Assembly: GCA_950097015.1 (NCBI GenBank)
Contig: CATNEN010000002.1
Location: forward strand, 4,030,001 to 4,094,000
DNA: 64,000 bases
From: Macrostomum hystrix
Taxonomy: Eukaryota > Animalia > Platyhelminthes
Reading direction: 5' to 3'
Shown: positions 3,578 to 38,160 of the stretch, in pieces
How positions within the stretch are numbered: the stretch's first letter is position 1
How the letters are laid out: each line of letters starts with the position of its first letter
Position numbers and translations under genes: made by a program
The notes under the pieces: model-generated
What the model saw: the letters and a program-made list of their open reading frames with translations, nothing else
What the model was told of the DNA's origin: nothing
Database searches by the model: none

Positions 3578-6500
3578 GTAGGTTTCTAACTTTTTTCGCT
3601 AGAAAAAAAGATTTGTTAAAGTGAAATTATTATTTTTAATTGCAGTTGAAGTACTTTAAGTTCGCGTGTACTTTAAGAGTGCGCACGTACTCGAGAACAC
3701 TCAAGAAAGTTCGCGTGTACCCTAGCAGTGCGCCTGTACTCCAGAAAAGTTTCAAAGCTCGCGTGTACCTTAGGAGCGCGCGTGTACTTTTTAACCGCTT
3801 AGAATGAATCATGTATTTGATTTTTTAGCTTAATATGCGTATATATTTTTTCAATTTCATTCTATAGTCTAGCAATCCTGCCATATCGCAAGATTTGGCC
3901 AACGAAACTGAGGTAAGCAGATAAACTTCTTGGTAATATTACCTTCTATGTATTCACTATACTTTCTAAGGCAAACTGGTTATGTTTTGTTTTGCACACT
4001 AATTAGTAAGCACTATTGATTTGCTTTTCTGTTGTAATGCATGCCCATTTTTTTACCTGTCTCTTTTGTTCAAAGCAAGAAACTTAGGGCCTTTTTACGT
4101 TACATATTTTGTCTGGCTGTTTGAATAAATTTGCATGCATTATATTTGAGTTTTAGGTACTAATATACTACTGTTAACTATAGTCTGACAATAGCACAAA
4201 TAAGGCCAGTAAAGACTAGTTGATAGGTCGATGATTAATAATAATAATAATTGCAGGAGGGCTGCGGGCAGTGGCACATCATTTGGTGACACTAGACCCG
4301 CAGCTAGCGAGTAGGCAATTCTGCCCATTTCGCTGACTCCTGAGCACACACGCACATAGATACTGTACGCAGGCATACGCTCACACAGGTGTGTACATCT
4401 GCCCTGACTTTCTCATCGTCAGGCAGTGTACACCCTCACTGTGCCTTGGAGGTTGGCCCTGAAGGGCGTAAATTGCACGACAAGCCCCCAAGCCTTCTCT
4501 CCGCGGCTGCGCCCCAAATGAATGTGGCCTCGCCGTGGAATCGAACTTAGGGACCGTGGTGCGAGAGGCAAACGCGTTAGACCGCTCTGCCACCGACCCC
4601 CGTGGTCGATGGTTAGATTAAGAAGTAAGAAAATTACTTACAGAAACATATCAGGTTTTATATAGACCCCGTCAAATCTCATTGGTGAGATCTGTGACCC
4701 GTCGAATCTCAATTGTAAGGTTGAAAGCAATGGATGATTGTCTAGCTTACTTTCAGTTGCATTTTATCCACGACACCACCCATGAGAAAACGTATAGCAA
4801 TGTCTCCTCGCCGACATCGATCATTTTACACCTGCCAACGGGAAGCATTTTTTTAGTCGCCATGGCAACGTGCTATGCAAATTTATTGTTGCAAATTATT
4901 TTTAGAAGCTCCGCTGCATGCCTAGTGTCGGGTTGGCCGGCAGAACATACTCGCCTTTTCAATATATTTATAATATGGTCAATATCTGCACTGTTAGTTC
5001 AATAAAAGTACATGTTGCTACACGCGCAGTTTGCATTAGATTTTCGTTGTGCATGTGCATTGATAAACTATTAGATTGACAATTTACAAGCGTACTTCCT
5101 GCCACCTAGCGGTTGGCCATTCTGCTCACCTTGGCCCTACCTCTGTCAATTTTCTTAGAATTCTAAACAGCAGCTTCAATCAGCCGAGCTGAAACTGGCT
5201 GAGTACCGCGAGCAGGCTCAGCTGTTCCTTCGCACTAGCACCGACGCTGCGGCCATGTCCGAGGTTGAGCTCAGCGCTGCTCAGGTTGAGAAGCAGTTTG
5301 TTGAGTAAGTTTCAGATTGATTTGGCCGGAAAGTGTACTCATTCAGTAACTGACACACAATGCCTAAATTCTGACTCGTGAGAAAGTAACCCTAGTGCCA
5401 TTTGTTTGTGAATATCGAACTCCCAACCCAGAACATAGGCTCATTTTTCTATTATATTTTTTAAGCTCTCCGTTTGATTACTTACCTACCGCTCCTACTA
5501 CCAGCTGGCTGTCGGTTTGTTGGTTCCCACAATGGGTAAACACAGAAAGTTTTTGCTCATAGTTTTGTTCTAACTGTCGTTTTCTTTTGAAAAAAGCGAC
5601 GAAAAGAGCTTATCATACTACTGCAGATAGATATTTAGCAATTACACATAACCCTGTTGGGCCAGACATAATAAAGCTGTGTACAACCGTTCAGTCCATG
5701 GACTGGAGAGGGAATCAGCTACATTCTAGTTTCTACACCAGCTAATGCTCGTACCCATATTACAGCCAGGTTAACCCAAATCCAGAGAACTCAAACTTCT
5801 CAATTAGGTGTCTTAGGCACGAATTCTGAAGCTCGGATTCTAAATTTAAGCTTTCGCAACCCCTTTTAATTAACCAGCACGCGGCACAGCCTAGACCAGT
5901 CACAGGCGTCCCTTGACTCCGAGCTGGAGTACCGTCAGGATCTGACTGCTCGCCTGGACAGCCTCAGCGCCGGCCTGCGGGACGAGCGCTTCGGTTTGGG
6001 CCAAGCTCGAGCTGCGGTGGCCGCTGCCGGCCTCGATGACAAGCCAGCAGAGGCGCTGGCCGCTCGTTGCGCCCTGGCCCGCCAGGAGGTTCTAGTTCAA
6101 CGACGCAGAATAACGGAGATCTTCGAGGAGGTCAGTGTGCGCTATCCGGGCCGGCGAGAAGAAGCGACGCCGCCTGAGCTGCGCGATCGGCTTGGCCGAC
6201 TGACATCGCAGCTTTTCGATCTGGAGGCTGAGGTGGACGCAGCCACCTCAGATGCGGAAGGCGCTCAGCAGGCGCCCCTGGTGCTAGACGAAGTCGCCGC
6301 TTTCAAACGGAAGCCCCAACTCACAATACAGACTCAGCAGCGAGACTCAACTGATGAGGGCGACGGCGAGTTGGACGAACCACCGAACATTGAGGTGACG
6401 CTAACTCTTGAACGGCGTCGCGAGAGTCCGAAGAGTCCGCGAAAAATGCCTCGACAATTCTCACCATCAACACCGTCCGGTACGCTGAGGACTCCGCCAC

Positions 6501-9500
6501 CGGCGTCGTCGCGATTCGACGCGGTTGATTTGCGGCCTCTACCGTCGTCCGGTTCCCCCACACGATCCGGAAAACCGACAATTCTGGTCGAGGAATCTCA
6601 GTCGAAACTTTATGAAATTACTGACGATGATTCGACGCCACACAAGCGCTCTGTAAATAGCACCGCCACCCAAGACAGCAGCGGCTCGGTTCCGACACAG
6701 AAGCGTCTGCCCAGTCTTGAAGAGCTGCCCTTTGAGCAGATAGAAGATGCGGCTGCTGCTACTACCAAGAAGAGTGTTGTGAGAAGTGAACCATCTCCAG
6801 ACAGATCAGTGCTGAGCGATGACGCGTCACTAGCAAAGTCGATTCCGAGCGCTGAAGCATCTCCAGCAAGATCAGTGCCAAGCGCTGAAGCATCTCCAGC
6901 AAGATCAGTGCCAAGCGCTGAAGCATCTCCAGCCAAGTCTATTGCAAGCGCTGAAGCATCTCCAGCCAAGTCTATTGCAAGCGCTGACGCGTCTCCAGCC
7001 AAGTCTATTGCAAGCGCTGATGCGTCTCCAGCCAAGTCGATTGCAAGCGCTGATGCGTCTCCAGCCAAGTCTATTGCAAGCGCTGATGCGTCTCCAGCCA
7101 AGTCTATTGCAAGCGCTGAAGCATCTCCAGCCAAGTCGATTGCAAGCGCTGAAGCATCTCCAGCCAAGTCTATTGCAAGCGCTGATGCGTCTCCAGCCAA
7201 GTCTATTGCAAGCGCTGAAGCATCTCCAGCCAAGTCGATTGCAAGCGCTGAAGCATCTCCAGCCAAGTCGATTGCAAGCGCTGAAGCATCTCCAGCCAAG
7301 TCGATTGCAAGCGCTGATGCGTCTCCAGCCAAGTCTATTGCAAGCGCTGATGCGTCTCCAGCCAAGTCGATTGCAAGCGCTGATGCGTCTCCAGCCAAGT
7401 CTATTGCAAGCGCTGAAGCATCTCCAGCCAAGTCGATTGCAAGCGCTGAAGCATCTCCAGCCAAGTCTATTGCAAGCGCTGATGCATCTCCAGCCAAGTC
7501 GATTGCAAGCGCTGAAGCATCTCCAGCCAAGTCGATTGCAAGCGCTGAAGCATCTCCAGCCAAGTCTATTGCAAGCGCTGAAGCATCTCCAGCCAAGTCT
7601 ATTGCAAGCGCTGATGCGTCTCCAGCCAAGTCAATTGCAAGCGCTGATGCGTCTCCAGCCAAGTCTATTGCAAGCGCTGAAGCATCTCCAGCCAAGTCGA
7701 TTGCAAGCGCTGAAGCATCTCCAGCCAAGTCTATTGCAAGCGCTGATGCATCTCCAGCCAAGTCGATTGCAAGCGCTGAAGCATCTCCAGCCAAGTCGAT
7801 TGCAAGCGCTGAAGCATCTCCAGCCAAGTCTATTGCAAGCGCTGAAGCATCTCCAGCCAAGTCTATTGCAAGCGCTGATGCGTCTCCAGCCAAGTCAATT
7901 GCAAGCGCTGATGCGTCTCCAGCCAAGTCTATTGCAAGCGCTGATGCGTCTCCAGCCAAGTCTATTGCAAGCGCTGATGCGTCTCCAGCCAAGTCAATTG
8001 CAAGCGCTGAAGCATCTCCAGCCAAGTCTATTGCAAGCGCTGAAGCATCTCCAGCCAAGTCTATTGCAAGCGCTGAAGCATCTCCAGCCAAGTCTATTGC
8101 AAGCGCTGAAGCATCTCCAGCCAAGTCGATTGCAAGCGCTGAAGCATCTCCAGCCAAGTCGATTGCAAGCGCTGAAGCATCTCCAGCCAAGTCGATTGCA
8201 AGCGCTGAAGCATTGGCTAGAATCGCACCAGATGATGACTCTGCCATCGCTCTGGGTTCAGAGCGACCGTCAGAGAAAAAAAGCGTGGAGTTTCCTGATT
8301 TCGATGAGTTCATCAGGAGAAGAAATGCTGCTAAGTTGCATAGCTCAGCAGTTTCGTTCACAGAAAGCGGCGAAACCTCACCAGCTAATGTGGTTGAAAC
8401 CTCATCATTAGAAGATGAGATTGCAAACAGACAACCAGATGCTTTTCCAGCAAAGCCTGTCAAATCCTACTCATCAGAGAGTTTTGAAGCTTCTTCAGTG
8501 CTGAGCACTCAAACTTCTCCAGCAAAGAGCGCTGAGTCTTCTCCAGCAAAGAGCGCTGAGTCTTCTCCAGCAAAGAGCGCTGAGTCTTCTCCAGCAAAGA
8601 GTGCTGAGGCTTCTCCAGCAAAGAGCGCTGAGTCTTCTCCAGCAAAGAGTGCTGAGGCTTCTCCAGCAAAGAGCGCTGAGTCTTCTCCAGCAAAGAGTGC
8701 TGAGTCTTCTCCAGCAAAGAGCGCTGAGTCTTCTCCAGCAAAGAGCGCAGAGTCTTCTCCAGCAAAGAGTGCTGAGGCTTCTCCAGCAAAGAGTGCTGAG
8801 TCTTCTCCAGCAAAGAGTGCTGAGGCTTCTCCAGCAAAGAGTGCAGAGGCTTCTCCAGCAAAGAGTGCAGAGTCTTCTCCAGCAAAGAGCGCTGAGTCTT
8901 CTCCAGCAAAGAGCGCTGAGGCTTCTCCAGCAAAGAGCGCTGAGTCTTCTCCAGCAAAGAGCGCTGAGTCTTCTCCAGCAAAGAGTGCAGAGTCTTCTCC
9001 AGCAAAGAGTGCTGAGGCTTCTCCAGCAAAGAGTGCTGAGGCTTCTCCAGCAAAGAGCGCTGAGTCTTCTCCAGCAAAGAGTAATGAGGCTTCTCCAGCA
9101 AAGAGCGCTGAGTCTTCTCCAGCAAAGAGTAATGAGGCTTCTCCAGCAAAGAGTAATGAGGCTTCTCCAGCAAATAGTGCTGAGGCTTCTCTAGCAAAGA
9201 GTAATGAGTCTTCTCCAGCAAAGAGTGCAGTGGCTTCTCCAGCAAAGAGCGCAGAGGCTTCTCCAGCAAAGAGCGCAGAGGCTTCTCCAGCAAAGAGCGC
9301 TGAGGCTTCTCCAGCAAAGAGTGCTGAGGCTTCTCCAGCAAAGAGTGCTGAGGCTTCTCCAGCAAAGAGTGCTGAGTCTTCTCCAGCAAAGAGCGCTGAG
9401 TCTTCTCCAGCAAAGAGCGTTGAGTCTTCTCCAGCAAAGAGCGTTGAAACGTTGCCATCCACTACTGAAAAATTGTCAACCATGGAGGACACCAACGGTC

Positions 9501-12500
9501 ATCTGGACGCAGATGCATTAAAAAATCGAGCATTGACGCTTCCGGACGTCGATGAACTGTTGGCACGAAGAGCTGCTGCACAGATTTCGTTTTCAAGCGC
9601 GCGAACGCTTAGTTCAGATGATGATAATGCTAATGATGCTACGCCCAAGAGTGGTGCTAAAGATGTTGCTCAATCGACGCAAGACGCCACACCATCGCTA
9701 TTCGAGAGTACCAGCGTCTCTCCAGCTAAACAAGCAGAAGAAGCGGAAGCAACAGATAAAACTATTGATGATAATGCTTTTAGTACAGATTTATCACCAA
9801 CCAAATCTTTTTCGAGCATAGAAGCCGCACCAGCCGAAGGAGAAATACCGAATGATGAAGTGTCCTTGGCCGAACGAGCACCGGGTTTTGAAGCGTCTTC
9901 AGTCAGATCAGTGCCGAGCCCTGAGGCGTCTCCAGCTAAATCTTTTGCAAGCGCTGAAGCGTCTACAGCCAAGTCCATCCCGAGCATTGAGGCGTCGCCA
10001 ACCAAATCAGTCCCGAGCGCTGAAGCTTCTTCAGCAAAGTCGATTGCGAGCGCTGAAGCATCTCCAGCTAAATCGATCCCGAGCGCTGAAGCGTCTCCAG
10101 CAAAGTCGATTGCGAGCGCTGAAGCATCTCCAGCAAAATCGATCCCGAGCGCTGAAGCGTCTCCAGCAAAGTCGATTGCGAGCGCTGAAGCTTCTCCAGC
10201 TAAATCGATCCCGAGCGCTGAAGCGTCTCCAGCAAAGTCGATTGCGAGCGCTGAAGCATCTCCAGCTAAATCGATCCCGAGCGCTGAAGCGTCTCCAGCA
10301 AAGTCGATTGCGAGCGCTGAAGCTTCTCCAGCTAAATCGATCCCGAGCGCTGAAGCGTCTCCAGCAAAGTCGATTGCGAGCGCTGAAGCATCTCCAGCTA
10401 AATCGATCCCGAGCGCTGAAGCGTCTCCAGCAAAATCGATCCCGAGCGCTGAAGCGTCTCCAGCTAAATCGATCCCGAGCGCTGAAGCGTCTCCAGCAAA
10501 GTCGATTGCGAGCGCTGAAGCATCTCCAGCTAAATCGATCCCGAGCGCTGAAGCGTCTCCAGCAAAATCGATCCCGAGCGCTGAAGCATCTCCAGCTAAA
10601 TCGATCCCGAGCGCTGAAGCGTCTCCAGCAAAGTCGATTGCGAGCGCTGAAGCGGTTCCATCTAGAGAGGACGTCCAAATTGATGAATCATTTTCGACAC
10701 CACTGGTGCCCATCGACAAAGAGTCAGCATCTCTAGCCAAATCGATACCGAGTGCTGAAGCGGTTCTATCTAGAGAGGACATCCAAATTGATGAGTCATT
10801 TTCGGCACCACTGGTGCCCGTCGACAAAGAGTCTTCATTGAGATCAGTGTCCAGCGTTGCAGCTTCACCGGCAAAAGAAGGGGTCCTAATCAAAGAAGAG
10901 TTTTCATTGAAGAGTTTGCCGGCTGCCGAATCTTCACCTCCCAGTGATGTTACGACTGCTCCGAAAGCATTTGAAAGCGCAGATGCATCAGCAAACAGAG
11001 AGGGACTTACTTTTAATGAGTCGATTTTAACAAAACGTATTCCTAGTGCTGAAGCATCTCCAGCCAGCAGTACTCCAAGCATTAACTTGTCTCCAGCTAC
11101 ATCAGTTCCCAGCTTGGACCTTTCACCTACAAGAGTCATGCCAGCTGTGGAAGCATCTCCAACCAGAGAGATTTCGAGCTTCGAAGCATCGCCAGTCAGA
11201 GATGTCCTGAGTATAGAAATCTCACCAACTAAAGAAGCGCTCAGTACTGAACTTTCTCCGACAGAATCTGTGCCGAGTTTTGAAGCCTCACCTGCAACAG
11301 ATATGCCGAGCGTTGAAGCTTCACCAACCAGAAACGTACCGAGTGCTGAAGCCTCACCAACCAGGAATGTATCGAGTGCTGAAGCCTCACCAACCAGGAA
11401 TGTATCGAGTGCTGAAGCCTCACCAACCAGGAATGTATCGAGTGCTGAACCCTCACCAACCAGGAACGTACCGAGTGCTGAAGCCTCACCAACCAGGAAC
11501 GTACCGAGTGCTGAAGCCTCACCAACCAGGAACGTACCGAGTGCTGAAGCCTCACCAACCAGGAACGTACCGAGTGCTGAAGCCTCACCAACCAGAAACG
11601 TACCGAGTGCTGAAGCCTCACCAACCAGGAACGTACCGAGTGCTGAAGCTTCACCAACAGATGTTCTACCTACTGATCCGTCCCAAGCGACCACTTTCCC
11701 CAGTGTGGAAGCATTTTCAGCCAAATCAGTTCCAAGCGCTGAAGCTTCTCCAGCTAGAAGTTTTATGAGTGCTGAAGCTTCACTAGCCAGAGAGGCTGCC
11801 AGTGCTGAAGCCTCTCCGGTAAGAAGCGTTGAAGGATCGCCCGGCAGAGAAACGCCTCAATCCGAATCTGTGCCGGCCAGTTGGGCAAGCGAGTCACCAA
11901 GCAAGAAGCTGCCCTACGCGACAGACATAGACGACTTAGCAGCCCTGAAGGGAGGTCGCGGTCGCGGCAGCGGCGCCTCAAGCCGCGCTGGAGTCGCCAC
12001 TAGCGGATCCGCCACCGAAGGTCGCGAGTTGACGGAGGCCGACCTGCTTCAGAAAGCCGAACTGGCGCACAATGTTAAAACTCTGCGTAGCGAACTAGAA
12101 GCGTTGCGCTCAGCTGGCACCATCGCCGAGTCGGATCCGGAGTATCGCCGACTGTCCAGCGAATTGGCTCAGCTCGAGTCTAGTAGTCAGGCTCAGGTAC
12201 GTGTTTCGTCTCACACTGCTTATGTTTTTGTATTAGTTAGCATCAAAGATATTTGCACTGGTGCCAGTTTAGCATATTTATTTCTGCTTTGGTAATTTTT
12301 ATTGAAGAAAAAATTGACAGCGAGCATAAAAAACTCAGCCGGCGTCCAACCACGTGTGTTTTTAGTAATATGATGAATGGAATAAACAAGTCCTTTCCCT
12401 GTTCATATCCCAACGTTACATTTTACTTTTTTTAATAAGATCTATCTTGGCGACAGTAGGGCAGTGATTCAGTGATATTGTTTGCCTGTACTCCGTCTAC

Positions 12501-15500
12501 GCAATGCCTTAACTTCCAACGCAATTAGCCGGCCGAGGGTTTTGTGTGAGGTTGTGGTCTCTGTGACTCTGCTTCTACTGGGCATCTCGTCTCTATTTTA
12601 ATGACCCACTGAGAATGCAGCGTGAATGCAGGCTTGACTCGATCTCTGTCTTCTGTGGCCGAATCAAAAGCTTCAAAGGCATATAGCAAATAATAATAAT
12701 AAAGCGAGCTGAAAGAGCATAACAGTAGAATGAAAAGAAGAGTCCTATCTAGCCTTGTAGAGAAGCCATGAATTCGAAATTGAATGAGAGATACCAGCTG
12801 CATTATATTTAGCTGCGGAGTAAACTAAAAGCTTGAAGTTCATTACACCTTGAAAAACGACTAAAAACTGTGCGTGAGTTATTTTTTTACGCCGAATCAC
12901 TTCACTCACTCTAGATAAATCAGGCGCCCGTGACCGAGGACCTTGTCAGGCCACGTCTCGTAGCGTCTAGTCGAAGCGCAAGCGAGTTAGAGGCAGCTCT
13001 AGGTCGTCTTGGCGCAATGGCCCCTCCACCAGTTCCTGCACCGACATCGGGCGCTGCTGATCCACCGACAACGTCAGCTTCTCGACCGCAATGCCTTCCA
13101 GATGAAGCGCTAAGTATCAGTAGCGAAGTAGTCTCCACTCTGACTGCCAATCCAGATCGTACGGCTATATTGATTAATGGGCGTCAATTGTCAGCTTCGG
13201 ACCTGGCAACGGCCTCCTTATTGATGCTTCGTCCGAGCGACACTGTCACGCTAGATAGTGCACAGCAGCCAGCGGCTCGGTCGAATGAGATTCGTTTCCT
13301 GCGCAGCGACCCCAACGTCGACAGCGACGGTGACTGGAGTCGGCTTCGTCGAGTTTGGTGTCGCGTTGAGGCCGACACTCCGATCGTGCGCGACGGAGAG
13401 GCAACTCTAGCGACGGCCAACGAGCTGCACGTGATCGGACCGCAGCAGGAGGCCAAGGTGGGCGCCTCGCAGTGCTACAGCCCGGCTGATCAAGTTGTCT
13501 GCGTGTTTTCCCAACCTAATCAGCAGCAGCAACAAGTCGTTTGGGTCGATCCCTACGAGACTGTGCTTATAAATGACGCGCCACAGACTGTACAGCCTTG
13601 TCAACCAATGAGACTGGAGCCAGGCGACCGAGTTCGCTTTGTGAATAGCGCCGACCAATCAGTGAGGCCGACAGGGGGGACACAACCCAGACTGTTGGTT
13701 CCATTGGACTATCGCCGATGCCGTCGGGCCACTGTGGTGCCGCTAGATCGGGAAACTGTCGTCACTGTTAACTTCCGGTCTAAACTGTTGCGTCCAGGCG
13801 ATGCTCTTTACCTAGGCGACGGTGAGACCTACAGTCTTCAGGGTGCTACGCAGTCGCTGGCCAATGGGGACGCTGTGGTGTTCTGGAACACCCAAGAACA
13901 GTCTGAACGAACGCCTGAACGACCAAGTTTAGGCAGTACCACAATTGACGCTGTCCCAGCGGACGAGGCGAGAGCCATGACTGAGGAACAGATCAAGGAG
14001 CGCGTGAGCAGCATGCATGGAAAGGTAATTGTTGTTTCTCATAGCCCTTCATAGTCATCATTTTGCTTGCGTTCCCGCCTCGAATTCGCTGCAACCGTTG
14101 GGTATAAAATTTAGCTGGAAAAATGTTCGCAGTTAAATCTGACTATAGTTACAGGATTTACGCAGCTGCTAAACTTTCATGAGTTGGCCCACTTCCTGTT
14201 CTGGTTTGTATATTCATAAGCAGAGGAAGCAGGGCGTTCTTAATTCATACCCCATGCAGTAAAGTCATGTGATAATAAACATTCATCAGCACAGCCAATG
14301 CCAAGTAACTCTTAGTTCAGTTGGCAAGCAAATGTGTACAGCACAGACAGGCTAGTACACATGTAAATGTTCGCCAATAAATGGGGTAGATATGAAACTA
14401 AAGCAAAACACACTCCTTTAGTTCTGTGCGCTACAAACTTTAAAACTATTTCAAGCCTCACTTCAGTCTGATACCAGTTGTGCCTGTGCAGACACATCAG
14501 CCGCTTTACGCTCGTATATATACTTCATTAGAAGGAGGCCTGTTTCTTTAATCCAAAACGCAGCGCGGATCATAAGCCAATAGACTCCATGTTTCTCGAT
14601 CGCAGCTTTTCAACAGCCTCTGTTATTTTTTTATTTTCTTATATAAGGACATCTTAAACGAACTACGAGTTCTATTAGTGCCTGTTAAGTCTTCTATCCG
14701 ATTTTAGGTATGTTACTGTGTTTTGAATTTAGTAAATATATCCCAATTATAAATGCAAATTAGGTCTCCCAGCCGCCGCGATGAGTAATGTACAATGTAC
14801 ATTAATTTTCTAACCCCCTGCCTCAGTGTACATATACATCCACCCCACTCTGGCTGTACTCTATTTATTTAAGCCCTTGTCGGCCCGCTAATCTGTGATT
14901 GGTCAGTATTGTACTCGTGACTTCCTAGAAACGAAAACCCATTCCAAATCCGCAGATGCGCGCCAAAGAGGATGAGCTGAAGCGGACACTGACACGCCAG
15001 GAGGAGTTCAACGAACGCTTGCGCACTGTGGCTATGAGAATGGACTCAACCAAGCAGAGCTTAGACGGTCTGGATCCGCGCAGCGCCGTCTCGTTGGATG
15101 AGTGCACCACCGATCACGAGAATCTAATGATTGAAGTCGAAGTCATCAGCCAGGAAATTGACTCCCTAGTGCGTCTGGGCCTGGAACTCTGCGAATCGGC
15201 CAGTCGGGACGATGAAGAGGCCATGCAAAAGAGTCTAGCCGCCCTGCAGAAGAAAGAGAAATCATTGAAAGATCTGGCTGAGCAGAAAAAGAAAAAGATT
15301 TTACAGACTGGACGAGATCGCGAGCGACATCAGAATGCTCGCACTCGCCTGCTGGATGACACAGCCCGGCTAGAAGCATGGACTAGACAAGCTGATTCGC
15401 GCCTACTCCAGTCTGTTAACAGTGCGTCATCTTCCAGCGAGGCAATGGAAGCTTGCCGATTAATCAACGCTGAGTTAAACAGCCGTCTGCAAGAGCTTAG

Positions 15501-18500
15501 CGACGCGCAGGTGCATTATAACCAATTATGCGAGTTTGAATCCCCAGATGAACGAGAGCCATTAGAGCGCAGATTGCACGCGCTTCAAGGAGCCATGGAG
15601 GCGTTGAAGAGTGACTGTATTGAGCGTCAGGTAGCGCTACGAGAGGCATCTAAGGCCTCTGAGCGGGTGCCTTTGTCATCCGCGGTCACTTCCGGGGAAG
15701 ACGCGAGTAGCGACGCCGCTACGGTGGACAGACGGGTGCAGCAACACGCCGAGGCTGCTGAAATTGGCCGACAGAGGCGAGCAGCTGAAGAGGGCCTGGC
15801 CAGCGTAAGTGTTTTATTGAGCGGCTTGAGCCTAATTTAAGCCATTGTGGGCCAGTTACAATACAAGCCTTATCTTATTAATTATATTAATATTATTCGC
15901 CTATTTCTAATACATGTTAGCCTGCGAAGTGAGCCGGTGGAGTGAGAGGTGTGAAGAAAGCGAGATCAGTTTTTATTGCGTCCCTATCCGGAATGTACAC
16001 TAAGTGACCCCCACCCCAGCCTTATTGCCTATTGGTCAGCCCAAGCCAGACAGGGGGGTAGGGCTAGGGTGGTAGAGAATGTTCACTGCCCCTCGGCCTA
16101 TCTGGACCACTAAAAAACCCTTCAGGGTGTCAAGATAAATATAACGCCTCGTCAGGCGACCTTCCGAAAGCGAGCCTTAGGCTGGCAAGCCTATAACTAG
16201 ATAGATCCAGGGTAGTTTTTTATTTCCTTCAAGAGGAGCCTGAGGAAGGCGCGTGTCGTTTATTGCTAATTTAAACATGGACGACGCAGACACAAATAAT
16301 AACAAAAGCAAGCAACTTCTAGCAGATTCCAGTGCCAAAGAACAGTTACTAATCAACATTACCGACTTCGATTTAAATTTGCAGCGTCTGCAAAGCGGAA
16401 TTCAGGATCATCAGAATCTGATCCAGAGTCTTGGAAACGATGTTGAACGTCTGGAACTCACGGACGAGCCAGTCTATGACGATAGCGACGAATTGCAGGC
16501 CCAATTGGACGACCAGCTTAGCTCGATTTCGCGCCATATTCGAAGACGTCGCGACGAAACAGTTCAGGCTGTGGACTCTGGGGTAAGTTTTAGAGGCCTT
16601 TATATTAACTTAAAGTGTATTTCGTAAAGTTTGATAACAAAAATTTTTCATTTTTTCGCATCGTCTAAAATTCTAAATCGAACAGGGCGATAGCGACCAG
16701 ATTAGTCGCAATAGCAGTAACAGATCTGTTCTTAGAACAATGGCAGGTCTTTTGATTCTCGTAAGTCGCACGAGTTTTTAGCATGCAAAAATAGCGTCTG
16801 CGTTGGTAACATTGGTAATATTAAAGTTCAGAAATTATTTTTCTTTTCTATTAGGGTCAATTTTTTAATAATAATTTCAGCTTCTGCTGCTTCTGGTCAT
16901 CCTACCATTTATTCTGCTCACCTGTATGTTCTTGTCAGCCGACTGTCTGCTGACTGTCTATCAGCTATTGCCGCCGCGATCAGTCTACTGAGTTTTAGGT
17001 TCCTAAAATATTGGTTGAAATATGAATATTGAAGAGATTTAGTTAGAGAAAAATGCGTTGTCCCGCATGTGTATAAGATTGAAACTTGCCTTGGACTAAA
17101 TTATTGTGAAGCTTTGCTTGTCAGAAGATGGAACGGCGGAATCAGAATCTGAATGTACATTATTATTGTACTTATACATTTTCGACATCTTGCTCTGCTG
17201 TGACAGCCCCCCTGCTGTGACAACCCCCCTGCTGTGTACACCAAGTTGGGGGTGGCGGTCGGGGTTAGAACTTAGAGGTGTGAGGTGGCGCTGCCAATAT
17301 ATGTACATGGATTGTACAGTCCTGAACTCCTAAATATAGCCTTCCGTAAATTGAAATTATTATGCAACGCATGTACATTGTTCAGATTGTTCCATTTGGA
17401 ATTGTGTACACATTTACAGTTTGTTTGCTGTAAACAAAGCATAGTACAAAAATAGTTTTTTTTTCTTGCAAGATTTGATCCATTTGAGTGGTTTTGTACT
17501 TTTACGCAGAATATTGCTAACCCTGTACTGAGCTTTGCTGAGCAGCATGCGTGCATCATTAATCGATATTAACAACACTGATTGTTTCAGACTCGCCCAG
17601 CTTCCCTGCAGTCCGTGGATCCGTCTGACTCGCCAACCAGAGCAAGCCTAGAGCTAAACAATGCCTTATCCCAGCTGTCCGCAGCAATGGCCAGGCTTAG
17701 TCGCCAGCCGGCAGTGGACACTCAGCAACAGGCAGCTAGATCGCCGGGTCTACAAGAGCAGCAGAGGAGATTTCAATCGGCTTTGCTGGCTGTTTCAGCT
17801 GCACTGGATGGCACTGAAGGGCGCCTGTTCAGATCGCAGGTTGACTCAGCTGCTACATTAGACGTAAGTTCATGCGGCTTACGCATATGAGGGCCAACCC
17901 CAGAGGCAATCATGTACACGTCTGTGTGTGTGTGTGCTCAAGGTTCAGTGTAGGAACGTACGGAATCGCCATTCTGTCCGTGAGTCGTTATTCGGGTCGG
18001 TTTTTTCAAACAAGAAATCTGAATATATTTATTTCATTGCAGTCAATGTCGTTTCAATTCCTACACAGATTTCAGGTGAGGGAATTGATTCACCGTAATA
18101 ACAATCTGGGATTCACGCCTTCATATTAAAGAAAATTGTTCTAGTTTAAACCCCTGTTGCAAGTTTAAAACACCTAATTCAGAATATTTAAGAAGTATCA
18201 CTGCTCGTTTTTAAGCATGTGCACACGTGTTTTACGCAATTCAAAAAGGCTAAAGCTAACAATTTACTTCAACGTTTTGAACTCATTCACGTAATGTCCC
18301 TATTCCATTGACTATAGATTATGCCCGATCGCCCTACACAATGCCCTTCACAAACCCGAGCCCTAGACCCACCTCACAGCTCATACCTGTGCTTGGTTAA
18401 CCCTAGAACCTAAAATCAGCCACCTCAAACACTTGGTGTTTGGTTAACTTGGTTGACCAACAAACGCTTGGTTAACTCCAGCCCTAGAATCAGCCACCTC

Positions 18501-36500: not shown

Positions 36501-38160
36501 GGTGCGCAAATGGGCCGCCTACACCGCAGTTGTTCTAGCCGCCAACACCAGCGACTCAGCCGGCGGCATGGGTGTTGAAGTTGGCCAGCAGTCCGGCAGT
36601 CCCGAGATGGCTCGGGTGGCCAGTCAGCTGACCAGGCTGGAGGCCGAGCTGGCCGACGTCCTGCGCAGGTTAAGGGCGGTGAGACGCGAGCTGGCGCTGC
36701 GTGAAGCGTCCTACGAGGTAAGAAATTTTTCAGAATCCAAAAACTTGTCCATAATTTTTTTATTTAAATTCACTAGTTGCCTACTAGCGAGTAGTAAGAT
36801 AAAGATATTGCTCAATTTCGTGCAGCAATTCATGAACCTCTTGTACCGCAGCACTCATTGTTGAGTATTTTCACCTTTCTTTCGATTACGTGGAATTAGT
36901 AAAACCTATAAGCCATCCTATTTTACTCTCGCTTTTCGTCTATTTTGTGTTGGCCTATCTACCCGCACATTGAATTGCACCGAGCCTTTCTGTGTGTGTG
37001 TGACTTTGTCTAGCCTATTAACTTACCTTTTCTACCTATTCCTACTTATTTCGTTTCAATCTTAATTTCTTTTTGTAGCCACTTGATTCTGTTGACGCTG
37101 ACCCAGTGCCTGTAGAAGCTGATCATGATGCAGATTATTTTACCGATCAAGAGCCGCTTGGAGCACGATCCGCCGCTGTTGCCGCCGCCGCCGCTGCCGC
37201 TAAGTATGATAAAAATTCTGCATTGGCTGTCAATTTTTGCGTCTATAAATCAATCAAAGTCTATTTTGCCGTCAATGTTGTTGATTAGCACACTGTAATT
37301 GTTACTCAAAGCTTGCCGCGCATGAATAAAGCCAAACTGAGCCATCGCCTCTAAAAACCCACCACCGAAAACTCTTCACACTTCTAGGATTGTCCTTAAA
37401 ATTTCGTCAGACTAAGCCTGCACCCCTAAAATCCACCACCCCAAACTCTTCACACCTCTATACTGTCCTTAAAATTTAGTCAGACTAAGCCAGCACTCTA
37501 AAACCCACCACCCCAAACTCTTCACACCTCTATACTGTCCTTAAAATTTAGTCAGACAAGCCTGCACCCTGAAAAACCCACTACCCCAAACTCTTCACAC
37601 CTCTAGGACCGTCCTTAAAATTTAGCCAGACTAAGCCTGCACTCTAAAAGCCCACCACCCCAAACTCTTCACACCTCTAGGACCGTCCTTAAAATTTAGC
37701 CAGACTAAGCCAGCACTCTAAAAGCCCACCACCCCAAACTCTTCACACCTCTAGGACCGTCCTTAAAATTTAGCCAGACTAAGCCAGCACTCTAAAAGCC
37801 CACCACCCCAAACTCTTCACACCTCTAGGACCGTCCTTAAAATTTAGCCAGACTAAGCCTGCACCCCTAAAAACCCACCACCCCAAACTCTTCACACCTC
37901 TAGGACCGTCCTTAAAATCGTTGTTTTACTCTTTCAGATCGCGGGTCGCGTTGTCTAGCCTCGGCGCCCACCAGGCCACGCCTCGTCGTCGTGGCAGCCT
38001 GTTGAACACCCTGTACCGCGGCATGCTGCTCAGCCTACCAATTGAAGCATTCTTCCTACTTCTATGCGGTATCGGCTACCTGTTAAAGCCTGGCTGCGAG
38101 AGTGACTGTTCAGAGTGGCCCAGCCTATTCAGTGTAAAATCGCAGGGTCTGCCCTATTAA
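3080..38160 (+). CDS. SYNE1: Giant nesprin (SYNE1/Msp300/ANC-1 family) spectrin-repeat KASH protein; 26-exon spliced model, about 5,490 aa in window, 5' end uncertain
   Basis: All 25 introns are GT-AG and keep the frame (22 phase 0, 3 phase 2). Many spectrin-repeat Trp motifs (LRDWLAGFETRL, MQSWLADTEDRL, LMEWLAGMEGKI). Segment AGIQAVINLCELL...CPTEQER...LEQRWRRICQRAVERRLEIEDTWRCW closely matches the recalled C-terminal repeats of vertebrate nesprin-1. Ends in a TM helix plus a short Cys/Pro luminal tail. Confidence 0.9.
3868..3912 (+). CDS. SYNE1: nesprin 45-nt exon (SSNPAISQDLANETE)
   Basis: ttcattctatag acceptor, GAG|gtaagc donor, phase 0-0. Confidence 0.7.
4237..4601 (-). mobile_element. 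tRNA-derived SINE, family A, near full length
   Basis: Minus strand: head GGGGTCGGTGGCAGAGCGG..AAGTTCGATTCC (A and B boxes), about 280-nt body, (ATT)n tail; three more copies in the window. Confidence 0.75.
4856..4869. promoter_or_regulatory. RFX X-box
   Basis: GTCGCCATGGCAAC fits GTNRCC-N2-RGYAAC. Confidence 0.5.
5171..5304 (+). CDS. SYNE1: nesprin exon (QLQSAELKL...KQFV)
   Basis: ttctaaacag acceptor (NAGNAG), GA|gtaagt donor, phase 2 matches the next exon. Confidence 0.8.
5878..12196 (+). CDS. SYNE1: nesprin giant exon (6,319 nt), mostly S/A/P/E/K low-complexity repeats
   Basis: taattaaccag acceptor, open frame through ORF 5996..12295, CAG|gtacgt donor at 12197. Confidence 0.85.
12915..14024 (+). 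CDS. SYNE1: nesprin exon encoding a non-spectrin, beta-rich FHA/cupin-like insert
   Basis: ctcactctag acceptor, AAG|gtaatt donor, 370 codons, phase 0-0. Confidence 0.8.
14956..15804 (+). CDS. SYNE1: nesprin exon (spectrin repeats)
   Basis: atccgcag acceptor, AGC|gtaagt donor. Confidence 0.85.
16385..16582 (+). CDS. SYNE1: nesprin exon
   Basis: aatttgcag acceptor, GGG|gtaagt donor. Confidence 0.8.
17591..17863 (+). CDS. SYNE1: nesprin exon
   Basis: ttgtttcag acceptor, GAC|gtaagt donor. Confidence 0.8.
18371..18704. repeat. 45-bp minisatellite TTGGTTAACTCCAGCCCTAGAATCAGCCACCTCACACACCTGTGC
   Basis: About 7 copies. Confidence 0.9.
18731..19054 (+). CDS. SYNE1: nesprin exon
   Basis: atcgcgcag acceptor, CAG|gtaaga donor; translation IILEELSRIREQ...QMRDSQ. 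Confidence 0.85.
19097..19245 (+). mobile_element. Second tRNA-derived SINE fragment (degenerate tRNA-CAT-like head plus GGCAAGACACTTA motif)
   Basis: GGGGTTGTAGCCTAG...CTCATGA...GGGGGTTCGATTCCCGACTCCA with broken anticodon and T stems, followed by a motif typical of CORE/V/Meta-type SINE bodies. Confidence 0.55.
19438..19809 (+). CDS. SYNE1: nesprin exon (spectrin repeat)
   Basis: ttctccccag acceptor, CAG|gtgggt donor. Confidence 0.85.
19909..20254 (+). mobile_element. tRNA-derived SINE, family A (head partly deleted)
   Basis: Homologous to 4237-4601 in the opposite orientation; B box AAGTTCGATTCC; long (ATT)n tail. Confidence 0.75.
20262..20471 (+). CDS. SYNE1: nesprin exon
   Basis: ttactttcag acceptor, CGG|gtgagc donor. 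Confidence 0.85.
20569..21282 (+). CDS. SYNE1: nesprin exon
   Basis: ccgccgcag acceptor (alternative in-frame AG 6 nt downstream), CAA|gtgagt donor. Confidence 0.8.
21301..21528. repeat. 33-bp minisatellite GAGTGACAGACTGGTTGCTGGGGTGTCTTGATG
   Basis: About 7 copies. Confidence 0.9.
21666..22175 (+). CDS. SYNE1: nesprin exon
   Basis: tcacctcag acceptor, CAG|gtgagt donor. Confidence 0.85.
22207..22350. repeat. About 21-bp degenerate repeat GACCCCTCCCTGGGGTCGTTT
   Basis: About 7 copies. Confidence 0.8.
22406..23098 (+). CDS. SYNE1: nesprin exon
   Basis: catcgcag acceptor, GAG|gtgagg donor. Confidence 0.85.
23173..29052. repeat. 30-bp satellite TAGGATTCTAAATCCAGAAGTCCCAAACAC
   Basis: About 196 nearly identical copies filling a 5.97-kb intron. 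Confidence 0.98.
29072..29413 (+). CDS. SYNE1: nesprin exon
   Basis: cattctccag acceptor, CAG|gtcggc donor (weak). Confidence 0.8.
29444..29980. repeat. 21-bp minisatellite TTCAACATCCGCCCTCTACCA
   Basis: About 25 degenerate copies. Confidence 0.9.
30033..30473 (+). CDS. SYNE1: nesprin exon (ETFLDKLTEW...VASVQK)
   Basis: ctgctgcag acceptor, AAG|gtttgt donor. Confidence 0.8.
30684..31034 (+). CDS. SYNE1: nesprin exon
   Basis: ctaatttag acceptor, AGG|gtgagt donor. Confidence 0.8.
31385..31408 (+). CDS. SYNE1: nesprin 24-nt microexon (KEFLDQLY)
   Basis: tttcccttctcag acceptor, TAC|gtgagt donor, phase 0-0. Confidence 0.7.
31872..32089 (+). CDS. SYNE1: nesprin exon
   Basis: ctttacag acceptor, AG|gttcgc phase-2 donor. 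Confidence 0.8.
32170..32266 (+). CDS. SYNE1: nesprin exon (YDRLMEWLAGMEGKI...)
   Basis: gtgtcgcag acceptor completes the Arg codon; AGC|gtgagt donor. Confidence 0.85.
32457..32645 (-). mobile_element. SINE family A, internally deleted copy
   Basis: Head and tail match 4237-4601; centre missing. Confidence 0.7.
32894..33223 (+). CDS. SYNE1: nesprin exon
   Basis: caccacag acceptor, CAG|gtctgg donor; strong recalled similarity to nesprin-1. Confidence 0.85.
33235..33540. repeat. 41-bp minisatellite GCAGTGTGCTCAAAGTCAAGATAGTTTGAGCAGTTAGGATT
   Basis: About 7.5 copies; each has an 8-bp inverted repeat TGCTCAAA/TTTGAGCA. Confidence 0.92.
33566..34252 (+). CDS. SYNE1: nesprin exon (most conserved spectrin repeat)
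   Basis: actccgcag acceptor, AAG|gtagtt donor. Confidence 0.9.
34487..34930 (+). CDS. SYNE1: nesprin exon (region equivalent to the adaptive domain)
   Basis: ttctgcag acceptor, TAT|gtgagc donor. Confidence 0.85.
35776..36717 (+). CDS. SYNE1: nesprin exon (last spectrin repeats)
   Basis: atccag acceptor, GAG|gtaaga donor; spliced DTY-ARLFTAC..IDRVRELERRL matches recalled nesprin-1 Y-MKLLGEC..IDSVKRLEHKL. Confidence 0.85.
37079..37203 (+). CDS. SYNE1: nesprin penultimate exon
   Basis: ttctttttgtag acceptor, AA|gtatga phase-2 donor. Confidence 0.8.
37345..37918. repeat. 74-bp minisatellite in the last nesprin intron
   Basis: GACCGTCCTT recurs at 37681 and 37755; about 8 copies. Confidence 0.92.
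37938..38160 (+). CDS. SYNE1: nesprin terminal exon: transmembrane helix plus divergent KASH peptide
   Basis: tactctttcag acceptor; RRRGS...LYRGMLLSLPIEAFFLLLCGIGYLLKPGCESDCSEWPSLFSVKSQGLPY*. Confidence 0.85.

What the first reader, a model, noticed from the sequence alone, without database searches (positions are those of the whole stretch)
5878..12196. 6.3-kb exon inserting about 110 S-P-x-K/R repeats into a nesprin: a candidate phospho-tunable spring
Seen: four in-frame arrays, SIASAEASPAK x~41 (6838-8210), SAESSPAK x~38 (8512-9440), SIPSAEASPAK x~22 (9907-10650) and NVPSAEASPTR x~10 (11300-11655). All share the core SAEASP; the 8-mer is the 11-mer minus 9 nt. Unit lengths are multiples of 3, much of the variation is synonymous and there are no stops. 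Known: S/T-P-x-K/R is the CDK/Cdk5 consensus, and neurofilament-H KSP tails and titin PEVK are disordered, phospho-regulated spacers. Inference: an elastic segment of about 2,000 aa in the LINC tether whose stiffness could be switched in mitosis or in neurons. I do not recall this motif in other nesprins.
Basis: partly seen in the sequence, partly recalled or inferred. Interest (0 to 1): 0.78.

Follow-up and report, generated by a model that had tools for sequence, protein, structure and literature searches.

The report
Ser-Pro repeat exon in flatworm nesprin
A 6.3-kb exon of a giant nesprin-like gene in the flatworm Macrostomum hystrix really does encode about 120 copies of a short Ser-Pro-x-Lys peptide, kept at the protein level and shared with a sister species; it is probably a lineage-specific flexible linker, and its regulation by phosphorylation remains an untested idea.

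Summary
Window 5878-12196 (+) is one stop-free exon of 6,319 nt (2,106 codons). It has four in-frame arrays (33 nt x41.9, 24 nt x38.9, 33/66 nt x23, 33 nt x10.7) and 122 S-P-x-K/R sites.

It is coding:
- The splice sites are canonical.
- About 960 non-repeat codons are open in the same frame.
- Skipping the exon gives an immediate stop.
- Macrostomum lignano gene models cover both exon ends and the neighbouring exons in the same order.
- Synonymous change exceeds non-synonymous change in every comparison of unit types.

The genome is the M. hystrix assembly. The gene is nesprin-1/2-like: two CH domains and Nesprin-1-type spectrin repeats lie 66-78 kb upstream on the same strand, followed by a spectrin rod and a C-terminal membrane tail. 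That tail does not match the KASH model.

About a third of this genome is minisatellite, so the arrays most likely arose as in-frame minisatellite growth of an older S[IV]PSAEASPA[KR] unit. Selection keeps S-x-E-x-S-P-x-K/R-S.

The "phospho-tunable spring" reading is neither tested nor excluded. AlphaFold calls the 8-mer array and the fourth array coil, and calls the first array a low-confidence helix.

Lineage-specific repeat blocks in giant KASH proteins are already known (fly Msp300-PE, worm ANC-1). This is a new variant of a known kind. The scan had not met this motif on other DNA.

The parts
5159..5304 (+). Upstream exon (spectrin-rod segment). Its donor is GA|gtaagt and it ends with 2 nt of a codon.
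   Evidence: tblastn of M. lignano P0001 residues 869-917. Sequence. The join to 5878 reads VEKQFVD-TRHSLDQ, which aligns without gaps to M. lignano VEQRFSE-AQDRLNQ.
5878..12196 (+). The focal exon: 6,319 nt = 1 nt + 2,106 codons, with no stop.
   Evidence: Both ends are covered by M. lignano proteins. Skipping it gives VE*.
5878..6831 (+). Unique N-terminal part. It holds the end of a helical (spectrin-like) segment and then a low-complexity stretch with conserved islands: PPNIEVTLTLERRRESPKSPRKMPRQFSPS at 6380-6469 and KRLPSLEELPFE at 6701-6736.
   Evidence: 61% identity to M. lignano P0001 over 341 columns. Coordinates.
6832..8213 (+). Array 1: 33 nt x41.9. The first three units are S[IV]PSAEASPA[RK]; the rest are SIASAE/DASPAK. 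The E/D pattern shows that multi-unit blocks were duplicated.
8291..8335 (+). Spacer motif copy 1, FPDFDEFIRRRNAAK, inside spacer 8214-8513.
   Evidence: AlphaFold predicts a helix with block pLDDT up to 79.
8514..9447 (+). Array 2: 24 nt x38.9, SAE[SA]SPAK. This is the 11-mer without S-I-A.
   Evidence: AlphaFold gives coil with pLDDT 32-39.
9539..9583 (+). Spacer motif copy 2, LPDVDELLARRAAAQ, inside spacer 9448-9888.
9889..10654 (+). Array 3: 33 nt x23, with a 66-nt higher-order unit that alternates SIPSAEASPAK and SIASAEASPAK.
10655..11305 (+). Decayed units and a 108-nt x2 duplication. About a dozen old ..E-x-S-P-x-x.. units still carry S-P.
11306..11658 (+). Array 4: 33 nt x10.7, NV[PS]SAEASPTR.
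   Evidence: AlphaFold gives coil with pLDDT about 40.
11659..12196 (+). C-terminal part. It holds decayed units, spacer motif copy 3 with an RG-rich stretch (ATDIDDLAALKGGRGRGSGASSRAG, 11918-11992), and a confident helical hairpin (12071-12196).
   Evidence: 56% identity to M. lignano P0003 residues 2-180. The hairpin has pLDDT 87-96. Coordinates.
12915..14027 (+). Next exon (acceptor ..tctAG| at 12913/4, or ..tcAG| at 12922/3, both phase 0). It encodes a beta-rich domain that UniProt names FHA in M. lignano.
   Evidence: Relatives were found only in Macrostomum.
37921..38160 (+). Presumed last exon: a hydrophobic span (LLSLPIEAFFLLLCGIGYLL) followed by a 24-residue tail ending GLPY.
   Evidence: No Pfam KASH match and no PDB match.

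Best explanation
The stretch is one large, obligatory coding exon of a giant nesprin-1/2-like gene of Macrostomum hystrix. The gene runs: CH pair, spectrin-repeat rod, this exon, a beta-rich domain, more spectrin repeats, and a membrane tail.

About 1,150 of the exon's 2,106 residues are four arrays. They grew by in-frame minisatellite amplification, a process rampant in this genome. The starting unit was an 11-residue S[IV]PSAEASPA[KR] that already existed before the split from M. lignano.

Selection acts on the peptide. It keeps S-x-E-x-S-P-x-K/R-S, one acidic and one basic residue per unit, the reading frame, and three short helical spacer motifs of the form [FLT]-[PD]-x-D-[ED]-[FL]-x.

The product is a long, Ser/Ala/Pro-rich, charge-neutral, mostly unfolded linker set into the rod. 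I think it works as a flexible extension or spacer of the tether, about 0.7 um in contour length if fully unfolded.

Each unit carries an optimal proline-directed (CDK-type) kinase consensus. Full phosphorylation would move each unit from net 0 to about -2 and would expand or stiffen the chain.

Shown here: coding status, gene context, conservation, motif and charge balance. Inferred: flexibility, phosphorylation and any mechanical role.
For: Coding:
- 2,141 open codons, including about 960 non-repeat codons; the other + frames are open only inside the arrays.
- Canonical acceptor and donor.
- Exon length is 3n+1. Joining 5304 to 12915 gives VE*, while inclusion gives a junction that aligns gap-free with M. 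lignano.
- M. lignano models P0001/P0002 end in the start of the array, and P0003/P0004 begin in its decayed end. Both then continue into the neighbouring exons in the same order.
- P0002's wrong-frame PEVFRVLKRLQ repeat back-reads to S[VL]PSAEASPAR in 33-nt units (my own decoding).

Constraint on the peptide:
- 24 of 52 variant types are synonymous, against 26% expected.
- pS exceeds pN in all 15 comparisons of unit types. Array 1 and array 3 SIASAEASPAK units differ by 3 synonymous and 0 non-synonymous changes.
- Across 47 distinct S-P contexts, S-4, E-2, K/R+3 and S+4 are kept.
- All four periods are multiples of 3, against 20 of 62 in background arrays.

Origin: minisatellites cover 34% of a 200-kb sample of this genome.

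Gene context:
- CH domains at C2:3952036 and C2:3956132.
- Spectrin_SYNE1 above cut-off at C2:3963120, 3963852 and 4005848.
- Spectrin hits on the + strand from 3964104 to 4007066 and inside the window.

Physical character:
- Each array has a net charge of 0 or -1 and is 55-73% S+A+P.
- AlphaFold gives coil with pLDDT 32-45 for arrays 2 and 4.
Against: - No transcript or proteome data could be consulted.
- The M. lignano models are predictions; they miss or mis-frame the middle of the array.
- The arrays are 93-95% uniform, so they are young. Young arrays can look constrained simply because little time has passed.
- AlphaFold (single sequence) draws array 1 as one long helix with pLDDT 63-70. 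The 11-mers also fall on the 'folded' side of a charge-hydropathy plot.
- Nothing here bears on phosphorylation.
- The KASH model is not matched, so attachment to SUN proteins is unproven.
Confidence: 0.55

Rival explanations
1. Tolerated passenger. The arrays are ordinary minisatellite growth that landed in a permissive linker of the protein. Selection only forbids stops and frameshifts. The motif itself, including S-P-x-K, has no specific role, and copy number drifts.
For: - A third of the genome is minisatellite: 62 arrays in 200 kb, and 22 arrays in this window alone.
- A 5.9-kb 30-nt array in a neighbouring intron is also open in several frames.
- The arrays are 93-95% uniform, and block duplications are visible in the E/D pattern.
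Against: - The same core peptide survives in M. lignano, although the unique flanks are only 56-61% identical.
- Array types differ mostly at synonymous sites.
- Old, decayed units still keep S-P and mostly K/R at +3.
- All four arrays keep exact charge balance.
Confidence: 0.25
2. Multivalent docking or condensate scaffold. The roughly 120 identical S-P-x-K units and three helical spacer motifs recruit many copies of a partner, such as a phospho-Ser-Pro reader, a kinase or phosphatase, or a cytoskeletal adaptor. The segment concentrates material at the nuclear surface rather than acting mechanically.
For: - High valency of one short motif.
- Three recurring helical motifs between arrays, the third conserved in M. 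lignano next to an RG-rich stretch.
- Fly Msp300-PE uses its own repeat-rich isoform to organise a perinuclear microtubule centre (PMC11230431).
Against: No partner or domain match was found for any part of the exon. This is an analogy only.
Confidence: 0.08
3. Proline-punctuated 11-residue helices. The 33-nt units encode hendecad repeats that form weakly amphipathic 3-11 helices, in the manner of apolipoproteins, perilipins, alpha-synuclein or LEA proteins. They would lie on the outer nuclear or ER membrane, or on a partner.
For: - AlphaFold draws array 1 as a helix with pLDDT 63-70.
- The hydrophobic moment of the 11-mers on a 3-11 helix is 0.24-0.29.
Against: - There is a proline in every unit.
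- The only bulky hydrophobic residue (Ile/Val) is lost in the 38-copy 8-mer array. That array has no 11-residue periodicity (moment 0.02) yet keeps SAExSPAK.
- Arrays 2 and 4 are predicted as coil.
- Single-sequence AlphaFold tends to over-call helices in Ala-rich repeats (own knowledge).
Confidence: 0.07
4. Not part of the mature protein. The open frame is a by-product of 3n-period repeats, and the arrays are spliced out or lie in an intron.
For: Frame illusions do occur in this genome: the 30-nt array at 23173-29052 is open on both strands (note s1-270683).
Against: - About 960 unique codons are open in one frame only.
- The spacers keep all four arrays in the same register.
- Both exon ends are conserved and are joined to the neighbouring exons in M. 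lignano models.
- Skipping the exon truncates the protein.
Confidence: 0.05

Closest known systems
Drosophila Msp300-PE tandem repeats (PMC11230431)
   Same: A lineage-restricted block of tandem repeats makes up much of a nesprin-family isoform. That isoform also has a membrane tail without a canonical KASH. The repeats have homologues only within the genus.
   Different: The fly units are 101-108 residues, about 20 copies each, negatively charged and predicted to be beta-rich. Here the units are 8-11 residues, about 115 copies, charge-neutral and built around S-P-x-K. There is no sequence similarity.
C. elegans ANC-1 six 903-residue repeats (PMC8139857)
   Same: Near-identical tandem repeats at the DNA level inside the rod of a giant KASH protein. 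They are required for function in the worm.
   Different: The ANC-1 repeats are long, helical and spectrin-like. They are not short low-complexity peptides.
Neurofilament-H/M K-S-P tails and titin PEVK (PPAK) segment (own knowledge)
   Same: Long arrays of short Pro-containing units in a cytoskeletal protein. Phosphorylation changes their charge and extension (neurofilament side-arms) or stiffness (PEVK).
   Different: These are unrelated proteins. Neurofilament units are K-S-P with Lys before the Ser, and are basic/acidic blocks. PEVK units are 26-28 residues. No phosphorylation data exist for the flatworm exon.
Xenopus tropicalis Ki-67 array RSPAKGASPAK (P0005)
   Same: This was the only non-Macrostomum hit of the word search. 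It is an 11-residue unit with two S/T-P-A-K sites, about 30 units, in a known heavily CDK-phosphorylated disordered protein (PMC8354752 listed, not read).
   Different: It is strongly basic (K/R-rich, no acidic residue), nuclear or chromosomal, and not homologous. The similarity is compositional.
PAS (Pro/Ala/Ser) random-coil polypeptides (own knowledge)
   Same: 55-73% Ser+Ala+Pro composition in the arrays. Such sequences behave as expanded random coils.
   Different: Those are engineered sequences without charges. Here each unit also carries one E/D, one K/R and usually one Ile/Val.

Membership tests
Nesprin-1/2 (giant KASH protein; ANC-1/Msp300/SYNE) | N-terminal pair of calponin-homology domains | tested here: met
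   PF00307 hits at C2:3952036-3952266 (E 2.8e-10) and C2:3956132-3956374 (E 4.2e-14), + strand, 74-78 kb upstream of the window. That they belong to the same transcript is inferred from the chain of + strand spectrin exons in between.
Nesprin-1/2 (giant KASH protein; ANC-1/Msp300/SYNE) | Nesprin-type spectrin repeats after the CH pair, and a long spectrin-repeat rod | tested here: met
   PF25034 (Spectrin_SYNE1) is above cut-off at C2:3963120 (E 2.5e-19), C2:3963852 (E 9.6e-19) and C2:4005848. PF00435 hits run along C2 from 3964104 to 4007066 and occur in window exons 14956-15840 and 19348-19827. There is a sub-threshold SYNE1 hit in 22406-23158.
Nesprin-1/2 (giant KASH protein; ANC-1/Msp300/SYNE) | C-terminal KASH domain: a membrane span plus a luminal peptide of about 30 residues ending PPPX | tested here: not met
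   The tail at 37921-38160 has a hydrophobic span and 24 further residues ending GLPY. It gives no PF10541 hit at E<=10. It is not among the 8 weak KASH hits in the genome. It has no match among PDB chains. The tail is KASH-like in layout only, and its splicing to this gene was not shown.
Proline-directed (CDK-type) kinase substrate arrays | [ST]-P-x-[KR] consensus present and conserved | tested here: met
   123 sites. K/R at +3 in 36 of 47 distinct S-P contexts. The M. lignano orthologue has SPAR, SPIR, SPPR, SPTK, SPVR and SPAK.
Proline-directed (CDK-type) kinase substrate arrays | The sites are actually phosphorylated, and in a regulated way | not testable with these tools
   No phosphoproteome or kinase assay is available.
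Entropic-spring segments (titin PEVK, neurofilament side-arms) | Intrinsic disorder of the repeat region | tested here: inconclusive
   Single-sequence AlphaFold gives coil with pLDDT 32-45 for arrays 2 and 4, and a helix with pLDDT 63-70 for array 1. On the charge-hydropathy plot, the main 8-mer unit (SAESSPAK) and array 4 fall on the disordered side; the 11-mers of arrays 1 and 3 and the SAEASPAK variant of the 8-mer fall on the folded side.
Coding minisatellite (in-frame tandem-repeat expansion in an exon) | Period a multiple of 3, no indels, uniform units, and the same process active around it | tested here: met
   Periods 33, 24, 33 and 33 with 0% indels. Minisatellites cover 34% of a 200-kb background sample, of which only 20 of 62 have 3n periods.

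The most novel reading that the evidence does not exclude
The exon is a kinase-switchable polyelectrolyte built into the nucleus-cytoskeleton tether. About 120 charge-neutral units each gain roughly two negative charges when CDK or another proline-directed kinase is active. A segment of about 1,150 residues would then go from a compact neutral coil (or weak helix) to an expanded, stiff, strongly acidic chain. This would change tether length, stiffness or partner binding at mitosis or in particular cell types. No such design is known in any nesprin.
Probability: 0.15. Interest if true: 0.75.

Novelty: new variant of a known kind. Interest (0 to 1): 0.42.

Why it matters
Giant KASH/nesprin proteins are thought of as spectrin-repeat rods. 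Fly and worm orthologues, however, each carry their own lineage-specific repeat block, and those blocks turned out to matter for function. A third, very different solution in a flatworm is a long array of a short, charge-balanced Ser-Pro-x-Lys peptide. It suggests that the middle of these tethers is a place where new low-complexity material is repeatedly recruited.

It is also a clean example of a minisatellite-ridden genome feeding in-frame repeats into a protein, with selection then holding the peptide.

M. lignano has transgenesis and RNAi (PMC5730564). The idea that repeat number or phosphorylation tunes nuclear anchoring is therefore testable, but nothing here shows it yet.

Tried and rejected
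- Pfam on the whole exon and its unique parts gave no family.
- KASH was tested in three ways (Pfam on the tail, Pfam across the genome, PDB sequences). None matched.
- Word searches with the exon start, the exon end and array 3 plus the decayed region found only M. lignano fragments. The other hits were compositional look-alikes: Xenopus Ki-67, a Streptomyces protein and an unnamed one.
- I used the neighbouring beta-rich exon as an anchor in the all-against-all protein search, to find orthologous positions in other flatworms. It returned only M. lignano and one 187-residue protein, so no wider comparison was possible.
- I searched the same genome with the array peptide. The 140 matches outside this locus are unrelated minisatellites picked up for their 11-residue periodicity (for example CVISHRSNPTK and VESVEESATEM). 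None is SAEASPAK.
- From those hits I suspected that 33 nt is a favoured period in this genome. I rejected this: only 1 of 62 background arrays has period 33.
- The exon start has a single copy in the genome, and the second nesprin-like gene on C35 shows no such exon.
- I considered whether the 30-nt x196 array (23173-29052) is a second giant repeat exon. It is open on the + strand, but the frame changes and there are stops at 25723-25915. It is also open on the - strand and is 98% uniform, so it is probably intronic.
- The scan's earlier notes were searched by sequence and gave nothing.
The only joins were two short exon-end junctions translated in a local script to check the phase.

Full report
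**What is there**

Window 5870-12292 (+) is a single open frame of 2,141 codons. An acceptor (..aaccAG|C, 5877/5878) and a strong donor (CAG|gtacgt, 12196/12197) delimit an exon of 6,319 nt, that is 1 nt plus 2,106 codons.

Tandem Repeats Finder reports four arrays with no indels:
- 6832-8213: 33 nt x41.9, 95% matches
- 8514-9447: 24 nt x38.9, 93%
- 9889-10654: 33 nt x23.2, with a 66-nt higher-order unit
- 11306-11658: 33 nt x10.7, 95%

They encode SIASA[ED]ASPAK, SAE[SA]SPAK, SI[PA]SAEASPAK and NV[PS]SAEASPTR. The exon holds 122 SPx[KR], 142 [ST]P and 102 SA[ED][AS]SP.

**Whose genome**

The assembly behind the window has 220,453,370 bases in 42 contigs, one contig of 13,505,968 and one of 35,345,953. 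These are exactly the total length, contig number, N50 and longest contig given for Macrostomum hystrix in Table 1 of PMC10468722. The nearest database proteins are from M. lignano, a free-living flatworm.

**Is it coding?**

A caution applies. In a sample of 20 x 10 kb from this genome, minisatellites (period of at least 10, at least 5 copies) cover 34% of the DNA. The window itself has 22 such arrays. A 30-nt x196 array in a nearby intron (23173-29052) is open for hundreds of codons on both strands.

The case for coding rests on other evidence:
1. About 960 non-repeat codons (N-terminal part, three spacers, C-terminal part) are open in this frame only. The spacers (300, 441 and 651 nt) keep all four arrays in the same SAEASP register.
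2. M. lignano gene models cover both ends.
   - P0001/P0002 carry about 900-1,330 residues of upstream spectrin rod. They run 61% identical through the first 330 residues of the exon and stop in ..SASPARSV.
   - P0003/P0004 start in the decayed units (EVPSAEASPIRD..) and run 56% identical to the exon end. They continue across the donor into the next nine mapped exon segments of the window, in order.
3. The upstream exon ends GA|gtaagt at 5304. Joined to 5878 it reads VEKQFVD-TRHSLDQSQASLDSELEY, which lines up gap-free with M. lignano VEQRFSE-AQDRLNQSEAAVDSELEY. Joined to the next exon instead, it reads VE-stop. The exon cannot be a simple cassette.
4. P0002 runs into the M. lignano array in the wrong frame (PEVFRVLKRLQ repeated about 20 times). 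Shifted by two bases, this can only read as E-A-S-P-A-R-S-[VL]-P-S-A, and the model ends in frame with ARSVPSAEA (my decoding). The sister species therefore has the same 33-nt unit.

**Constraint on the peptide**

- Within arrays, 24 of 52 variant types are synonymous where 26% is expected. The non-synonymous ones are conservative: E/D, A/S, A/P, I/V and K/R.
- Between consensus unit types, pS exceeds pN in all 15 comparisons. The SIASAEASPAK units of arrays 1 and 3 differ by three synonymous changes and no non-synonymous change.
- Across 47 distinct 13-residue contexts of S-P, the best-kept positions are S at -4, E at -2, K/R at +3 (36 of 47) and S at +4.
- Each array has one acidic and one basic residue per unit, giving net charge 0, 0, -1 and -1.
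- All four periods are 3n, against 20 of 62 in the background.
- These comparisons are not independent, and the arrays are young (93-95% uniform). Block duplications are visible in the E/D pattern of array 1. I read this as good but not conclusive evidence of purifying selection.

**What gene**

On the same strand of contig C2 lie, in order:
- two CH domains at 3,952,036 and 3,956,132;
- Nesprin-1-type spectrin repeats above Pfam's cut-off at 3,963,120, 3,963,852 and 4,005,848;
- spectrin repeats from 3,964,104 to 4,007,066;
- the window's own spectrin exons;
- a last open frame (37921-38160) with a hydrophobic span and a 24-residue tail ending GLPY.

That is the nesprin-1/2 layout. The tail, however, gives no Pfam KASH hit even at E<=10, is not among the genome's weak KASH hits, and matches no PDB chain. 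I call the gene nesprin-like by architecture. KASH membership was tested and not met.

A second nesprin-like gene sits on C35. It shows no such exon.

**How wide is it?**

Word searches with three parts of the exon found only M. lignano plus compositional look-alikes. The neighbouring beta-rich exon, used as an anchor in the exhaustive protein search, found only M. lignano and one short protein. Within what these libraries hold, the exon and its neighbour are Macrostomum-specific.

The only notable outside hit is Xenopus tropicalis Ki-67. It carries about 30 units of RSPAKGASPAK. This is a convergent, basic array in a known CDK substrate.

**Physical character**

The arrays are 55-73% Ser+Ala+Pro. 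Single-sequence AlphaFold gives:
- coil with pLDDT 32-45 for the 8-mer array and array 4;
- one long helix with pLDDT 63-70 for array 1;
- a short helix (block pLDDT up to 79) at the spacer motif FPDFDEFIRRRNAAK;
- a confident helical hairpin (pLDDT 87-96) at the exon's C-terminal end.

That spacer motif recurs after array 2 (LPDVDELLARRAAAQ). It recurs again near the exon end (ATDIDDLAALKGGRGRGSG..), where it is conserved in M. lignano. The exon thus looks like a threefold module of array plus helix.

The 11-mers have a modest hydrophobic moment on a 3-11 helix (0.24-0.29), whereas the 8-mer has none (0.02). The 8-mer lost S-I-A, and with it the only bulky residue and the 11-residue periodicity, yet it kept SAExSPAK and grew to 38 copies. 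The conserved property is therefore the S-x-E-x-S-P-x-K core rather than a helical repeat.

**How it most likely works**

I commit to this reading: a lineage-specific, mostly unfolded, charge-neutral linker that lengthens and loosens the rod. It was born from minisatellite growth and is held by selection on the peptide (confidence 0.55).

S-P-x-K/R is the optimal CDK consensus (own knowledge). Full phosphorylation would take each unit from 0 to about -2, which is -0.18 to -0.25 per residue. That would expand or stiffen the chain, as in neurofilament side-arms.

This step is inference only. I give the full "phospho-switchable tether" reading about 0.15.

The rivals are:
- a neutral passenger (0.25);
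- a multivalent docking scaffold (0.08);
- proline-punctuated amphipathic helices (0.07);
- not in the mature protein (0.05).

**Compared with what is known**

Lineage-specific tandem repeats inside nesprin orthologues are already described:
- Drosophila Msp300-PE has two kinds of repeats of about 100 residues, found only in Drosophila, together with a non-KASH membrane tail (PMC11230431).
- C. elegans ANC-1 has six repeats of 903 residues (PMC8139857).

The flatworm exon is the same kind of event, with a quite different, short, kinase-consensus unit. I rate it a new variant of a known kind, of moderate interest.

**Limits**

- There are no transcript, population or phosphorylation data.
- The M. 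lignano models are predictions.
- The AlphaFold runs had no alignment.
Only two short exon-end joins were translated locally, to check the phase.
- The contig is not human.

Noticed in passing
window 23173-29052: A 30-nt unit repeated 196 times (98% matches, 5.9 kb) lies between two spectrin exons. It is open as RILNPEVPNT on the + strand in two frames, with a break at 25723-25915, and as VFGTSGFRIL on the - strand (854 and 1,049 codons). It is probably intronic, but it is the largest array in the window.
   Followed up: partly
window 42293-47890: A purine-rich array of about 5.5 kb (20-nt unit GGGAGAGAAGGGAGACAGAT, about 240 copies; GC skew and AT skew both +0.7 to +0.8). It lies downstream of the presumed gene end and is open in all frames on both strands.
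   Followed up: no
20 loci L024-L043 (10 kb each, 7 contigs of G000): Minisatellites (period of at least 10, at least 5 copies, at least 150 bp) cover 34% of a 200-kb sample, with periods spread over 12-65 nt. This is more than the 22.9% RepeatMasker figure published for the assembly.
   Followed up: yes
window 8291-8335, 9539-9583, 11918-11992: A short acidic-then-basic helical motif recurs after arrays 1 and 2 and near the exon end: FPDFDEFIRRRNAAK, LPDVDELLARRAAAQ and ATDIDDLAALKGGRGRG. The third copy, with its RG-rich tail, is nearly identical in M. lignano. It may be a binding site.
   Followed up: partly
window 6380-6469 and 6701-6736: Conserved islands in the otherwise variable N-terminal low-complexity part: PPNIEV.LTLERRRESPKSPRK.PRQFSPS and KRLPSLEELP[FY]E. 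Both are kept in M. lignano and are candidate short linear motifs, including an SPKSPRK stretch.
   Followed up: no
window 12915-14051: The beta-rich exon next to the repeat exon (named FHA-domain in M. lignano UniProt entries) has no Pfam hit. In the exhaustive protein search it finds only M. lignano (68% identity) and one 187-residue protein (38%). It appears to be a genus-restricted domain inside a spectrin rod.
   Followed up: partly
window 37921-38160: The C-terminal tail has KASH-like layout (..SLPIEAFFLLLCGIGYLL, then 24 residues with two Cys, ending GLPY) but gets no Pfam KASH or PDB match. The genome's best KASH hits lie elsewhere (C11:5818829 and C39:7674306) and only just pass the cut-off.
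   Followed up: partly
G000 C35:282699-318918 (+): A second nesprin-like gene: a CH pair at 282699 and 284845, and Spectrin_SYNE1 at 287438 with E 6e-47, a much stronger match than for the gene in this window. No SAEASP-type exon was detected there.
   Followed up: partly
protein P0005 (Xenopus tropicalis Ki-67), residues ~444-790: About 30 tandem units of RSPAKGASPAK / RSPAKAATPAK, giving 83 [ST]Px[KR] sites in the whole protein. This is a striking CDK-consensus array in frog Ki-67 that the word search pulled out by composition.
   Followed up: no
protein P0002 (M. lignano A0A1I8I875), residues ~1335-1565: This UniProt model reads the orthologous array in the wrong frame (PEVFRVLKRLQ repeated). 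It is a gene-model or assembly artefact that hides the real S[VL]PSAEASPAR repeat.
   Followed up: yes
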